NCBI RefSeq assembly: GCF_002571385.2
Contig: NW_019218082.1
Span: forward strand, 124,001-188,000
Direction: 5' to 3'
Source: Stylophora pistillata
Lineage: Eukaryota
Length of the DNA stretch: 64,000 nt
Of the stretch, positions 1 to 9,300 are shown one piece after another (position 1 is the first letter of the stretch; every line of letters starts with the position of its first letter). A program made the position numbers and the translations under genes. Below the pieces are notes generated by a model. The model was not told the origin of the DNA, did no database searches, and saw only the letters and a program-made list of their open reading frames with translations.

Positions 1-394
1 TTCGGGATTATTAGTGCGAACAGATGAGTGTGATTAGGAGAAGTGAAAATACTTATAAAATTTATCCCAACTTTGATACACCCGCTAGCAAAAAATGTTG
101 GCGGAAAAATTTTGGGATATTTGAGTGAATGTTCCTTGCTGTTCAAGGTGGCAAGTCTTAGCTAGTAAAAACAGTTACTAAATATCGCTCCAACATCCGT
201 GCAAATGATGTTGGACGAGTATCCGTTGGAAAATAAACATATGTTGAATACTTTTATGCGGGCCTGTAAACCTGTAATAAACTACGAAAGCTTAAACACA
301 GGCTAGTAAGAAAAGGTTTTACCTTCTCAGCCAGAGCTGATGAGTGATAATTTCCCTGAGTTTGAATATTTTTTACTTGTGCAGTTATCCTTAC

Positions 395-2464
395 CAAAAT
401 AGTTTTCACGAACATATCCTCAGCTTCACTCCCAATCGATGCAAGTGTGGCAAAATCCGCAGCGCATTTCTCTGAGGCTTGAACCCAGTTGACTGGACCA
501 GGAAAGTACTTGTATCAAATATTGTTGTACAGTTTATATCCATTAGGGCACTTTGCTGTTAAAATTAAAATCAGCTTGATTTAATTCTAAGGGCTCACGA
601 ATTTGTGCACGAGATATGGTTAATCGTTATGAATTATGGTGAGGATTGTCAAAATAAAAGCAGTCTTACATGGTCCTTGCTTTCCAACACCACTCCCTGA
701 AAAAGAACAAATTTTTAAAAAGTATAGTTATTGAGTTATTTCGTGCAGAAAGATGTTATTCATTCAATGACACAGGTATGAAAGGACAAAAAGAACTCGT
801 GGCTCCCAACTTGGAGTCAAACTTGCGACCTTCCAATTACTATTTTGGATTCTCCACCGTGGGACTGGGAGACTCATGGTAGGCTAGGTCGTTGAGCTAG
901 GTCCATGGTGACAAAATTTCTCCACACTGCTTGTCGGGATAGGAATGTTGATATATGTTGCGTATGCGCTATGATGATGTAAATGATGATGATCATTTTT
1001 ATAAGCCACAGATCTCTACCATGCGTCGACTACAAACATATTGTTATACCAAATGTACATTTAACAGCTTTTTTTTTTTACAAACAAACCTGTTACTGGG
1101 AGCACATTATGCAGGAAGTTTCCTTCGTTACCAGGAGGGTTAAATAAGGCGACGATGTAGGTTTTACCGCTTGCACTTTTCGCCTTTCCAATACCGACGT
1201 CTTGAGATCCAACCCAGACAAGCTGGGTAAAATAAGAAGACTTAAGAGATTCCTTTGCGCTGTGGAAATCATAGAATCTGATTTCATTATACCACGACCG
1301 CACGCTTTTAGCTGCGACGTCTTTCTCATCTTTGGTCGAGAAAATATTCTGACCATATTTGGAGTTGACGTCAATCTTTTCCTTGTCTTGATTGGCTAGT
1401 TGAGTTGCCCATAACTCGGCCTTGTTGGTTAGGTCGAGTGAGAGCTGAAGAGGAGCGGCGGCGTGCATCAAACGATACTTGTTTATCAATTGTAATTCCT
1501 TTTCTAAGAATGCTTCAACTCCTGCGAAGAAAAATGACTAAAATTTATTTGTTAGCTAAACCAAACAATTAAAGTTAACTCTTATGAGCCACGATCTTTT
1601 CTGTTCAGTTCATCAAAATTTGGAGCGACAAGGACAGTGTATAGGTTTAACAAGTGTCTTGTCCCTCCCCACCAATACTGGTCGGAAAATAACAAAAACC
1701 AAGTCCAAGTCTAAGTCTTCAGTTCAAGTATTTTTTTTTTTTTCACAATTACGTACTCCGGGGAAAGTTGCATCTGCAAGATGCGTTATTATACAACTTG
1801 ATCCTCTGTTATTTCGCAGTCCACCGATTTAATCCTGGTTTCACTCCAAGAAGAATGGGTCGGACATTGAAACAAAAATGAATAACTAAATAACTAATTG
1901 TGTAAAACATTTCGAAAAGATCAGTCATTAGTTATCGCTTGGAAAAAAGAGGGTAGGGAGGGTGGAGGATTTTAGGGGGATCTCGTGATTTCAGGGGTAA
2001 CACGGGGGGAGGGGTGTGAGTCGTCGTCGACAAAGTATAAAGTGGGAACTATAGAAAATTAACTGCCTATTAATTGCCATTGAGGGAGGGAGTCACGCTA
2101 ATATTAGAGAGCCAAAGAGGGGATCAGCTGAATATTATCGTGACACAACAAAAACACTCCCACCCTTCCCTGGTGATAAATTATGGCAGCTCCTAATTAG
2201 GACTCCTTTGTAATCGACTTTAAGTTGATTCATCTTTAAGGTATTTAATCAATTATGATTTTGAATTGGTAAAGATATCTTTCAACAAAGAGCCTGTGCT
2301 GCTATATATCGGAAAGAATGACAGCCGAAATGGTCGCTTGAAACTTCAAAAGGTAACCTCACATTACCTGGTGCCTTCTGAGAGGCTTCGGGTATAGGAT
2401 AGGGGGCAGCTTTTATTGTCACCACGAACAACAGCACAGTTTCAAAACACGTTCGGAGAAACAT
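395..2464 (-). CDS. Secreted CAP/SCP (GAPR-1/GLIPR2-like) domain plus C-type lectin domain protein, 3' partial; coding exons 2464-2368, 1521-1090, 555-395; in-frame TGA at 517-515
   Basis: Exon 1 has GCC-ATG at 2464 and signal peptide MFLRTCFETVLLFVVTIKA, donor CAG|GTAATG. Exon 2 follows acceptor ttcgcag and encodes CAP motifs NKYRLMH, YGQNI, SVRSWYNE, YFTQLVW, VGIGKA, YIVALFNPPGN, donor CAG|GTTTGT. Exon 3 follows acceptor ttttaacag and reads KCPNGYKLYNNI*YKYFPGPVNWVQASEKCAADFATLASIGSEAEDMFV, the N-terminal half of a long-form C-type lectin domain, donor TTG|GTAAGG. Phases (1, 1, 0) are consistent. Confidence 0.8.
765..950. mobile_element. Degenerate tRNA-related interspersed repeat (second copy at about 26285-26450)
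   Basis: Both copies show the same layout: acaaa(a/g)aa, then an antisense B-box-like segment (ggagtcaaac / ggaatcgaaac), accttc, gagact..atggt, and aggtc/aggcc. Confidence 0.4.
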
Positions 2465-3473
2465 GGCTGACAAGTTTCTATCGTCAAAAGAAGGAAACGA
2501 TAAGAAGTTAGCGTTTTGACTTGCTCATTATCAACCAGAGTTGATAATGAGGGGGGGGAGGGAGGGAGAGGGGAAGGAGAGCGTTCTGTTTACGGAAAGG
2601 TGTAAAAATATTCCTTATTGCTTCATGCTCATGCAATCCGTCAATGGATCCAGGAAAGTGGGCACTTCACTCGTAAAACACGAAGCTAACCCAACCTAAT
2701 TAACCATGCAGTACCCTCGCGAAAAGGGGAGGTACCAGATCAAATAATTCATTAGGTAAACACCTTTATTGCTGGTGCTTTAACGCTTGCTGTTGAATTA
2801 ATTCATTTTCATTACTTCCCTTCACTTTCCTTTAAATGGACAAAATTAAAGGTGACAGTAACTTTTAAGGCCTTGTTGTGTATATGAATGTCACCCAGCA
2901 ATGCTAGTCACTTATTCATAATTGCAAGGCGAGCAGAATAAATCTGATCACTGTCTTTCCATTAGGACTTTTCCTTAGCTATTAGCGGCTAGTTAAGCAG
3001 ATTCCGATTACAGATTTCGTCGTCACATGATTTTTAATTTTAAACTGGACAATATCAATGCGTTTTTGAGATTTTATTTGAATATGTTTCCGTCCGTCTT
3101 CGATTTTTCCACTTTCCACCTTGTCGGTTCTTATCCGTCTGTCACCAGCTACTCAAAACAGGTAAGTTTTTCTACCTTTAAGATCAAACTAATCACGAAG
3201 AAGAAGAAACAAAAAATCTCGTTGAACCAAGGTTTCGAAGCATATACAATCTCGAAACAGAAACCGGAGTTTCTCGCTGCAATCACCGCACCCAAGATTT
3301 ACCAACTACAATCTCAAAGTTGACATGATTGTGAGTGGCAACCTTGTCAATAAATGCATCTTCCCACACATTCAAGGTACGTAAATGTATTGCCATTTGT
3401 CAGACAATGTACACAAAAAATCATCTACCAATAGCTTCGTTTTGTCGAAAAGTGTTTTCTAAATAAATCTTAC

Positions 3474-6375: not shown

Positions 6376-9300
6376 ATGTCGACGTTGATCGTGGATTTCT
6401 CTGGTTCAACGTCCTCTTTTTGGCGTGTACTCTTCGTTGCCGTTCTTGTCCTCTGTTTGGCTGGGAGTGGCTTAACTTGCCCAGAGAATTGTCTATGTTA
6501 CCGGACGCATGTCGGACCAACTGTGCGCTGTAACCATCATTCTTTGTCAAGAATACCCAATGTCCCAACTTCGACTGTTGTGTTGTAAGTAGCGCTGTAA
6601 TTGTCTTTGTAAACGCGTGCGAGCTGTTCGCCAACACAATGAACTCACTGTTTAACTTGGTGTCATTTTGGATATTTGTTTAAAAGGCTTTGAGAGGATT
6701 TAAGCACAACGTGAATCTCTTATATCGTGAGTCAGTTTAGCATATATGTTCCGACAGCATTTGGGTTCCTTCCAAATGCGATAAAAGATCAACTATGTTT
6801 TACATTTGTTCCTTAAAACTGCAAGCCATCGCCGAATTGTGGGCTTGCGATCGCTTAATCCGGTAAAATTTGCGGTTTTTATCGTTGAAACTCTGACGGC
6901 GATTCAAAGAAAAGACAATCGTTGGTCTGCCCTATTTCAAAGTTTGAGTGAATTTCGTCTGACCGGCGTCAGGATAATTACCGCAAAGAGGCACACGAAA
7001 AAAGTTTATTTTATAGATTTTTGATAACATAACGGCTTAGCATGAACACAAACATATGCCCGCCATGGTAAATTTCAATCCAGCAGCCTTCTGACATTGG
7101 AGATTGGCATCTCAAATCATGTAGACGCCATGCTAAGTCATTAGAGGCATTTAGTTTGATCAAATCTTTCCAAATCGAAACAGTGACGATTTCATTACAT
7201 GTCCGCTTAGGCTCGACTTCAGACTAGTTAATCCACATCTTTCAATCATTAGATTTGCTTTACGAGAGACAATTAGTTTTGCAATATTTCATCGAAAAGA
7301 TCTGCTTCCACCGCAAGAATTTCGTGACAGTTCTCGAACAACCCAATGTCGAATAATGCTGGAGATTTTTTTTGTCAATTCCGAAAAAACGCACTTTTGG
7401 ACCCACGAGTTCTCAAAATACGTGAGACATAAAACGTTTGATGAAAAATTCTTGGTTCCATTATTTTGAAATCAAGAGAACAGCGCCATTCCTCTATTTC
7501 GTGACATGTCACGTATTTAAGTGTTTTACTGCCATATGGTACACAAGACAGCCACTTTTCCATCTTTTTTTTAGAGTTTTCGAAGAGTATTTTATATTGC
7601 AAATAGATGTTTGAAGTCAAGTGCTCCGTTTACAGGCCCTTCAGGAATGAAGAAGCGATTTTAAGCATTCAACGCCTTTCTTTGTCAGACCGGAACAATT
7701 TGGCACTACGGCGCTGCGCCAATTTTCTCTCAATGAAACGTTAAGTAAAAAATATGCATTCCTGTGATGTATTGTGTTGGATTTGAGACTCGAGAAGTTA
7801 AAAAAACTTTATCAAGGTAATGTAAAGGTCGGAAAAGTTATTTAGTTTTACTTGACAAAGATGCTACCAGTAAGATTGTAAGTGTTTCCTCCTTTTGACT
7901 GCTCGCTGGAACAAGGGGAAACAAATTTTGATTTAGTTCTATTTATGCTTTGACTGCTAGATGCTACTACTTTCTCTAAATAATACGCTTGTTTTGCCGG
8001 TGAAAGTAAAGTTCTGCCTAAATTACCAAATCCGCTTCGATTCCGTCCCTTCCATGGACAGATTGTGTCTGAAAGTATATGTAGACAACACTTTTATGAC
8101 TGAGCCAGCAAATAAAACATCAAGCTGTTTAATAAAGAACTTTTTGGTCGCGTTAAAAAGACATTTCTCGTTATCAGTTTAAACAATTGGCTTGAGCTTT
8201 ATTTAGCGTAGTGTTCATTACTACGCAGATCACTCATGTATTAATTTATTAATCCACAGTTCACAGGTATGGTTTTTATATATTCACAGCCATTCAGAAG
8301 TAATTGCAATGTCTAGTTAGCCACACGTGCTTTAGTAAACGTTTAGACCATGCTTGATGTTTGTTGAATTGGAATCTTTTCTGGTTTTCTTGTCAACTTC
8401 CTGCCATCAACGAAACTACGTTTTGAACTGATCACCTTTTGTAGTAAACCAACCTTAAAGGATAGGCTTGTCAGTTGTCTCTTTGAACAACAAAAATGTA
8501 GGGGATCTCATAGTTTGCGATTGAATTCTACCCTCAAAGTTGAAGACTGGCTAAAATATTTCGAGTGGGACTTGGTTTGGGATGATTAAAGTGCTGTAAA
8601 AAGTAATTAAAAAACATGCTTTGTCGACTTTGGTGCGGTTTGATGGAGCATTTCCAAGATTGGTATACCACAGGAAAAATCATCTTGAAACCATTGTAAT
8701 TTCGCCCCACTCCTTTACGTAAGTAATGCCTTTAAAAGGATATACCGGTACTTTCCGAATTGTTTCTAAATTTGGCACTTTTCTATAGCCTTGCGCTGGA
8801 CATCTGAATACTGGAATCAAAGTTAAGTCCTCTGTGCCTATTTCAGTTGCTTGCTTGTGATTCTTAGTGTTCTTTGCTGAGTTGGTAAGATCCAATTTGA
8901 ATAACCGAAAAAGTTATTATCATATAGCTAAAACTATGATTGTTATCGGAGCTACAATCTTCAAATAAAGTGATTTCAGATTGCTTGATCTCACAAACAT
9001 TTAGGAGTGCTCAACGGAGCCAATCCTCAAAATAGCCGCTCCCCAGCCTCAGTTGAACTAGCTGGCAACTTTTTCGAATAGGTACGAATCTAGGCTGTGA
9101 AGGAATATTTCGGCGAATATTTGTCAGGTATTTTTGCTACAGTAGTAGAACTTCAACTATCCAACTCTTTCCTTCTAATGTTATTTTTCTCACCTATTTA
9201 CTGCTAGTAAATAACATTCACACTTTAATCCCTAAGAGTTACTGGCATTTCATTTCTCCTTCCAATATCACCCTCGAATCAGACATTACTGAGGTCAGGA

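What the first reader, a model, noticed from the sequence alone, without database searches (positions are those of the whole stretch)
395..555. In-frame UGA at the conserved cysteine of a C-type lectin domain: candidate recoded (Sec or readthrough) codon or nonsense allele
Seen: splicing 1090 to 555 gives ...VTAKCPNGYKLYNNI-TGA-YKYFPGPVNWVQASEKCAADFATLASIGSEAEDMFVKTIL, with TGA at 517-515. The 40 codons after the TGA stay open, look like an undecayed lectin and end at a good phase-0 donor. Established: long-form CTLDs start C-P-x-G-[WY]-x6-C-Y, where the second Cys pairs with the first; Cys-aligned UGA is the standard signature for finding selenoproteins. Inference: this could be a secreted lectin with Sec in a structural disulfide, or a readthrough switch producing CAP-only and CAP-lectin forms. 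A one-base TGC/TGT to TGA mutation or a sequencing error is at least as likely. The exon is absent from the ORF track.
Basis: partly seen in the sequence, partly recalled or inferred. Interest (0 to 1): 0.78.

Follow-up and report, generated by a model that had tools for sequence, protein, structure and literature searches.

The report
Reference-only stop codon, not selenocysteine
The stop codon at a conserved cysteine of this coral lectin gene is found only in the reference sequence, because other colonies and five related corals read cysteine there, so it is an ordinary broken allele or base error rather than a selenocysteine site.

Summary
The TGA at window 517-515 (minus strand) is real in the assembly. 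It sits at the second cysteine of a long-form C-type lectin domain (CTLD).

It is not recoded:
- Four other sequencing runs of the same coral read TGT or TGC (Cys) there. These are RNA raw reads (5 of 5), a polyA RNA contig, a run of unrecorded kind whose contigs span the introns, and a fourth run holding both alleles. None reads TGA.
- Five orthologues or homologues from other corals read Cys.
- No SECIS element lies on the transcript, by Rfam and by a fold-based scan that recovered a control hit.
- The gene ends at an ordinary TGA.

It has nine exons and 890 codons: signal peptide, CAP domain, a missed 27-nt micro-exon, CTLD, a weak SEA-like stretch and a P/Q/Y-rich tail. dN/dS against a ~92% identical orthologue is 0.06-0.12 before, between and after the stops.

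A second in-frame TGA lies one exon downstream, left of the window. It is not Cys-aligned (Ser, Asn or Phe elsewhere). It travels with a Cys-to-Trp change at the true lectin Cys2, and it also appears in two other runs, so it is a genuine nonsense allele.

Best reading: a private nonsense change on an already disabled haplotype, or a consensus error. The scan earlier noted another private in-frame TGA in this reference.

The parts
2368..2464 (-). Exon 1: start codon and a hydrophobic N-terminus that looks like a signal peptide (by eye). It ends in phase 1 at a GT donor.
   Evidence: Sequence; frame and junction computed. The loose end of the X16 RNA contig behind L021 4324 matches the end of this exon.
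1090..1521 (-). Exon 2: CAP (cysteine-rich secretory protein / SCP) domain.
   Evidence: Pfam PF00188, E 2.2e-15, 58 bits. RNA joints at both borders.
670..696 (-).
   Evidence: Joints 3355>3470 and 3495/6>3889/90 of L021 in RNA raw reads (X23) and in the polyA RNA contig (X16). AG/GT borders. Conserved in L035.
395..555 (-). Exon 4: first third of the C-type lectin domain (C0, C0', C1). It holds the TGA of the finding.
   Evidence: Pfam Lectin_C, E 0.0048 for the 40 codons after the stop. Orthologous exon is 91% identical in L035.
515..517 (-). In-frame TGA at the codon of conserved Cys C0'. It is private to the reference sequence.
   Evidence: L021 place 3315 (+ strand T). X23 RNA reads show A in 5 of 5 (TGT). 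The X2 contig shows A. The X16 RNA contig shows G (TGC). X8 has one contig with A and one with G. Orthologues read TGC/Cys.
1..394 (-). Start of intron 4. The gene runs on left of the window. Exon 5 is L010 7698-7479 (rest of the lectin; TGG at 7563-7561; second TGA at 7551-7549). Exon 6 is L010 6721-6609, exon 7 is 6267-6209, exon 8 is 5517-5330, and exon 9 is 4833-3461 with the terminator TGA at 3460-3458. L010 position = window position + 8000.
   Evidence: Joints, borders, frames, terminator.

Best explanation
The TGA is an unrecoded premature stop that exists only in the reference sequence. It arose by a single third-base change in the TGY codon of the conserved lectin cysteine C0'. The gene is otherwise intact, expressed and strongly conserved. 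It encodes a secreted protein built of a CAP domain, a C-type lectin domain, a SEA-like stretch and a P/Q-rich tail. Most likely it is a true private variant of the sequenced colony. It would lie on a haplotype already disabled one exon downstream by a Cys2-to-Trp change and a second TGA, so a further stop costs nothing. That haplotype would give at most a CAP-only fragment. The normal allele in other colonies makes the full 890-residue protein with all six lectin cysteines. Shown here: the stop is absent elsewhere, Cys is conserved, no SECIS was found, and the second stop is shared by other samples. Inferred: that the first stop is a real allele rather than a consensus error, and that both stops lie on one physical haplotype.
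For:: at L021 3315, none of four other runs has the reference base. RNA raw reads are 5/5 TGT, a polyA RNA contig reads TGC, a contig of run X2 (kind not recorded; it spans the introns) reads TGT, and a fourth run has both TGT and TGC. Cys at this codon in L035, L038, L039 and L040. Cys in the distant homologue L028; no SECIS anywhere in the 8.6 kb that hold the rest of the transcript and its 3' UTR, while the same fold-based scan recovers the control hit; the gene's own terminator is TGA; the downstream TGG and TGA states of the reference recur in an X8 contig that differs from the reference at 14 places, all of the listed ones in the intron, and in 2 of 5 X23 RNA reads. So that nonsense haplotype is natural; the orthologue L035 has no stops, all AG/GT borders are kept, and dN/dS is 0.08, 0.06 and 0.12 in the three segments; the reference frame is open for all 890 codons apart from the two TGAs, so the damage is recent.
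Against: In X8 and X23, the samples that carry the downstream TGG/TGA haplotype show no TGA at the first site. The first stop is therefore not a general feature of that haplotype and could equally be a consensus error. The site would be tri-allelic (TGA, TGT, TGC), which is unusual. The assembly may also mix the two haplotypes. An earlier scan note (s1-775569, unchecked) reports another private in-frame TGA in this reference. That could hint at a class of errors, or it could simply reflect that readers pick out TGAs.
Confidence: 0.58

Rival explanations
1. Base-call or consensus error in the reference assembly. The sequenced colony really has TGT and/or TGC at this codon, and the stop does not exist in any genome.
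For:: no other run shows the reference base, including X8 and X23, which carry the reference-like haplotype one exon downstream. The gene is under strong purifying selection, which argues against real stops. Earlier scan note s1-775569 reports another one-off TGA in the same assembly (unchecked).
Against: A consensus error to a third base is rare, since the other samples have A or G on the + strand and the reference has T. Private single-base variants are far commoner than assembly errors. The same reference sequence holds a second stop that is demonstrably real, so a disabled haplotype is at hand.
Confidence: 0.34
2. Selenocysteine codon. UGA is recoded with the help of a SECIS element and gives a Sec-Cys bridge in the lectin domain.
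For: UGA lies exactly at a conserved Cys. A second UGA in the same domain at first looked Cys-aligned too. The downstream frame is intact.
Against: Transcripts and contigs of other colonies read UGU or UGC, never UGA. No SECIS was found by the Rfam E-value scan or by a fold-based scan validated on a control. Its only candidate is weak, intronic and at chance level. The second UGA aligns with Ser, Asn or Phe, not Cys, and it sits beside a Cys-to-Trp loss. The gene terminates at UGA. A word search of the literature found no Sec-containing C-type lectin.
Confidence: 0.01
3. Programmed stop-codon readthrough, or a regulated switch between a CAP-only and a CAP-lectin product.
For: A stop at residue 199 would leave a complete CAP domain. 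Some coral lineages have the CAP exon without lectin exons nearby (L036, L023, L026).
Against: A programmed site should be conserved as a stop, but here it is a sense codon in every other sample and species. The base after the stop is U at site 1 and A at site 2. From my own knowledge, these are not the leaky UGA-C context. No conserved structure follows the stop.
Confidence: 0.02

Closest known systems
Cys/Sec homologue pairs, the signature used to discover selenoproteins (SECISearch/Seblastian logic)
   Same: An in-frame UGA aligned with a conserved Cys, with an open and conserved frame downstream.
   Different: No SECIS. The UGA is absent from RNA and from the contigs of conspecifics. The cysteine is a structural disulfide partner, not a redox-active one.
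Natural loss-of-function (nonsense) polymorphisms, and premature stops private to one reference assembly
   Same: Single-base TGY>TGA and TCA>TGA changes in an otherwise conserved gene. One of them is shared by several samples, and the rest of the frame has not decayed.
   Different: Nothing essential. An unusual detail is that three changes on the reference sequence hit the lectin's disulfide framework or truncate it within 90 codons.
Vertebrate CLEC18 (mannose receptor-like) proteins, which are secreted CAP/SCP plus C-type lectin proteins. This resemblance is recalled from my own knowledge and was not tested here.
   Same: A signal peptide, an N-terminal CAP domain and a C-terminal-side C-type lectin domain in one secreted chain.
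   Different: CLEC18 has EGF-like domains between the two. It lacks the SEA-like stretch, the Cys-rich stretch and the ~450-residue P/Q/Y-rich tail found here. Orthology was not tested.

Membership tests
Eukaryotic selenoprotein gene | The in-frame UGA is present in the mRNA and kept across individuals | tested here: not met
   RNA raw reads are 5/5 UGU, the polyA RNA contig reads UGC, and the X2 contig reads TGT. No run other than the reference has TGA.
Eukaryotic selenoprotein gene | A SECIS element in the 3' UTR | tested here: not met
   the Rfam scan at E<=10 over L010 (which covers exons 4-9 and the 3' UTR) gave no SECIS family; the fold-based scan recovers the control (L022) and gives only one weak intronic candidate, against 0-3 in shuffles. 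Sensitivity to atypical SECIS forms is limited.
Eukaryotic selenoprotein gene | Orthologues carry Sec or Cys at the aligned position | tested here: met
   Cys in L035, L038, L039, L040 and L028. This is compatible with Sec but equally expected for a plain nonsense change at a Cys codon.
C-type lectin-like domain, long form (Pfam PF00059) | Profile match | tested here: met
   Reference pieces are weak because they are cut by the stops (E 0.0048 and 0.017). The uninterrupted orthologous exon 5 of L035 gives 6.2e-9, above the cut-off. The homologue L028 gives 3.3e-17.
C-type lectin-like domain, long form (Pfam PF00059) | Six framework cysteines (C0-C0', C1-C4, C2-C3) | tested here: not met
   All six are present in the orthologues and in the common allele of the species. 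In the reference sequence C0' is TGA and C2 is TGG (Trp).
CAP / SCP superfamily (Pfam PF00188) | Profile match over the whole domain | tested here: met
   E 2.2e-15, 58 bits, profile positions 1-115 of 117.
SEA domain (Pfam PF01390) | Profile match | tested here: inconclusive
exon 6 alone gives E 0.017 and 15.7 bits, below the cut-off of 26.4. Exon 8 has no match.
Programmed stop-codon readthrough site | The stop codon is conserved among relatives | tested here: not met
   It is a sense codon in all other samples and species.

The most novel reading that the evidence does not exclude
The truncating haplotype (Cys2-to-Trp plus TGA in exon 5) shows up in the reference and in two of four other data sets. 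It may therefore be a common, possibly maintained, natural knock-out that leaves a CAP-only or CAP-plus-half-lectin product. That would parallel the coral lineages in which the CAP exon stands next to sulfotransferase genes with no lectin exons nearby. The gene would then be a case of ongoing, recurrent domain loss in a strongly conserved secreted protein.
Probability: 0.1. Interest if true: 0.3.

Novelty: not a real feature. Interest (0 to 1): 0.1.

Why it matters
A selenocysteine in a structural disulfide of a secreted lectin would have been a new kind of selenoprotein, but it is not one. Three practical points remain:
1. In-frame TGAs in this coral reference need checking against other colonies before they are read as recoding.
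2. The locus needs a corrected nine-exon gene model that includes a 27-nt micro-exon.
3. A real nonsense haplotype segregates in a gene that is under strong purifying selection between genera. This is of modest interest for coral population genetics.

Tried and rejected
1. A first ungapped SECIS pattern scan failed on the positive control because that hairpin has a bulge. I discarded it and replaced it with a constrained-fold scan.
2. The whole-genome Rfam SECIS_1 search scored only 129 of 7990 candidates and gave one sub-threshold hit. I used it only as a control hairpin, not as a census.
3. No close paralogue exists in the genome for either lectin exon or for the CAP exon (best 41%), so mis-assembly from a paralogue is rejected.
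The 49-residue exon-5 piece found nothing in the metagenome contigs. The CAP exon did find loci.
5. Exact-product look-ups of two small overlapping ORFs whose sequence depends on the allele found nothing on record. This is uninformative.
6. For a while I read the second TGA as a second Cys-aligned UGA. I rejected this once the common allele and the orthologues showed the true Cys2 four codons upstream.
7. Findings searches by place and by words gave nothing on this gene.
8. The big representative-protein search, structure prediction and complex prediction were not used, because the question did not need them.
9. The joined spliced protein was never sent to a search tool. Exons were searched one by one by reference. 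Frames were checked only in local scripts, with X at both stops.

Full report
**Observation**

On the minus strand, window 555..395 reads ...KCPNGYKLYNNI-TGA-YKYFPGPVNWVQASEKCAADFATLASIGSEAEDMFVKTIL. A GTAAG donor follows, and the TGA is at 517-515. The piece after the stop matches Pfam Lectin_C weakly (E 0.0048). The upstream exon 1521..1090 is a CAP domain (E 2.2e-15).

**Where the window lies and the full gene**

The window is G000:C298:124001-188000, in a 398-Mb genome of 5513 contigs. Public runs that hold the stretch are labelled coral or coral metagenome. Earlier notes of this scan call the genome Stylophora pistillata (unchecked by me).

I fetched the DNA left of the window. I then laid four runs on L021, which is C298:121201-126800 (L021 position = window position + 2800). 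The runs were:
- X23: stranded RNA raw reads.
- X8: contigs of a metatranscriptome that also cover the introns.
- X16: a 3150-nt polyA RNA contig.
- X2: contigs of a run of unrecorded kind, from another study. They span the introns.

The RNA joints define the exons, all with AG/GT borders:

| Exon | Coordinates | Note |
|---|---|---|
| 2 | window 1521-1090 | CAP domain |
| 4 | window 555-395 | first part of the lectin |
| 5 | L010 7698-7479 | rest of the lectin |
| 6 | L010 6721-6609 | |
| 7 | L010 6267-6209 | |
| 8 | L010 5517-5330 | |
| 9 | starts at L010 4833 | the loose end of the RNA contig was located there |

- The TAA that seemed to end the lectin is intronic.
- Read with X at the two stops, the reference model is open for 890 codons. 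In order it holds a hydrophobic N-terminus, CAP, a linker, a C-type lectin domain, a SEA-like stretch (exon 6 alone gives E 0.017, below cut-off), a Cys-rich stretch and a ~450-residue P/Q/Y-rich tail without a Pfam match.
- The gene terminates at a TGA at L010 3460-3458.
- The joined protein was not sent to any search tool. Exons were searched singly by reference.

**The codon in other colonies**

L021 place 3315 is the + strand complement of the third base of the TGA. The reference has T there. The other runs read as follows:

| Run | + strand base at 3315 | Codon |
|---|---|---|
| X23 RNA reads | A in 5 of 5 | TGT, Cys |
| X2 contig | A | TGT, Cys |
| X16 RNA contig | G | TGC, Cys |
| X8 | one contig A, one contig G | TGT and TGC |

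Nobody else has the reference base.

**The second TGA**

Exon 5 of the reference reads ...NFPGKKWGVI-TGA-TNFNWKYNACDGSRGFVCKRPLR. I first took this for a second Cys-aligned UGA. The reads and the orthologues say otherwise.

- In X16, X2 and most X23 reads, the codon four positions upstream is TGC (Cys), not TGG. The TGA itself is TCA (Ser) (places 2361 and 2350).
- This gives the canonical spacing of Cys2, eight residues, then Trp.
- The reference states (TGG, TGA and two further nearby changes) recur in an X8 contig that differs from the reference at 14 places, all of the listed ones in the adjoining intron. They also recur in 2 of 5 X23 RNA reads at 2350.
- So this nonsense haplotype is natural and is transcribed.

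**Orthologues**

A word search with the CAP exon and look-ups of the encoding contigs gave coral contigs from other assemblies.

L035 is a Tara Pacific metagenome scaffold and is presumably a related pocilloporid. That identification is my inference.
- It is collinear with the reference over exons 2-8.
- Its exons are 91-93% identical to the reference. All splice borders are kept and it has no stops.
- It reads TGC (Cys) at site 1, TGT (Cys) at the Trp position, and TTT (Phe) at site 2.

L038, L039 and L040 also keep the lectin exons.
- At site 1 they read NNV-C-YKYF, NNV-C-YKYF and NNS-C-YKFF.
- At Cys2 they read GKK-C-GVI or GRK-C-GVI.
- At site 2 they have Ser, Asn and Phe.

L028 is a distant homologue with a CAP domain 47% identical.
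- CAP (4e-16) and Lectin_C (3e-17) sit in one open frame.
- It reads KKS-C-YRYF and GRK-C-ATL-S.

Cys at site 1 is therefore universal, and site 2 is a variable non-Cys position.

dN/dS between the reference and L035 is 0.08 before site 1, 0.06 between the sites and 0.12 after site 2. The gene is strongly constrained along its whole length, and the reference shows no decay beyond the changes named.

**SECIS**

- The Rfam E-value scan of L010, which covers exons 4-9 and the 3' UTR, lists no SECIS family at E<=10.
- My first ungapped scan missed a control hairpin, so I dropped it.
- A constrained-fold scan recovers the control (L022 1509-1550, the best SECIS_1 hit). On the gene strand of L010 it finds only one weak GTGA candidate, inside intron 6 at -7.8 kcal/mol. 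Shuffles give 0-3 such candidates.
- A word search of the literature found no selenocysteine-containing C-type lectin.

**Interpretation**

Selenocysteine and programmed readthrough are refuted. What remains is a premature stop private to the reference sequence.

I favour a real private variant (about 0.58). The same sequence carries a demonstrably real disabling haplotype one exon downstream, so a further stop there would be neutral. Private variants are also much commoner than assembly errors.

A consensus error remains a serious rival (about 0.34). X8 and X23 carry the downstream haplotype without the upstream TGA, and the site would be tri-allelic. Another private TGA has been noted in this assembly (s1-775569).

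**Comparison with known kinds**

- The architecture of CAP plus C-type lectin recalls vertebrate CLEC18. This is from my own knowledge and was not tested.
- The SEA-like stretch and the P/Q-rich tail are extra relative to CLEC18.
- As a recoding site, the feature is not real.
- As a gene, it is an ordinary member of known domain families with a nonsense polymorphism.

Noticed in passing
L010 7551-7549 and 7563-7561 (C298:123549-123563), minus strand, left of the window: A second in-frame TGA lies in the lectin domain, with a TGG (Trp) at the true Cys2 codon four codons upstream. The common allele reads TGC...TCA. The reference states recur in an X8 contig and in 2 of 5 X23 RNA reads, so a truncating haplotype segregates.
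   Followed up: yes
window 670-696, minus strand: A 27-nt in-frame micro-exon (GSGVGKQGP) lies between the CAP and lectin exons. It is used in RNA and conserved in L035. It is easily missed by gene models.
   Followed up: yes
L036 8001-16417; L023 4001-6411; L026 387-2229: In some other coral assemblies and metagenomes, the orthologous CAP exon (84-89% identical) is followed within 1-4 kb by Sulfotransfer_4 genes. No lectin, SEA or tail exons lie within up to 8 kb. This may be a lineage-specific loss or a rearrangement of the C-terminal part.
   Followed up: partly
window 747-1001 (intron 2): An interspersed repeat with at least 45 copies at 68-78% identity across the genome. It looks SINE-like by its size. 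It was not classified.
   Followed up: no
L010 32-192: A long perfect-stem palindrome matches several plant miRNA-precursor families well below their cut-offs on both strands. It is most likely a MITE-type inverted repeat, not a miRNA.
   Followed up: no
L010 4833-3461, minus strand (exon 9): A 457-codon exon that starts with a Cys-rich stretch (CPSYC...CNPWCC). It continues as a P/Q/Y-rich low-complexity tail with short repeated motifs and no Pfam match. The distant homologue L028 ends instead in a Q/N-rich tail.
   Followed up: partly
L010 about 6950-7160 (intron 5), minus strand: A tandem repeat that translates as SQSV repeats in all three frames. It is intronic according to the RNA joints.
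   Followed up: no
L010 1184-1882, minus strand: A 233-codon open frame downstream of the gene, probably the next gene. By eye it resembles a 3'-5' exonuclease of the REX4/ISG20 type. It was not searched.
   Followed up: no
window 515 (L021 3315): The site is polymorphic TGT/TGC among other colonies. X8 holds both. With the reference base it would be tri-allelic.
   Followed up: partly
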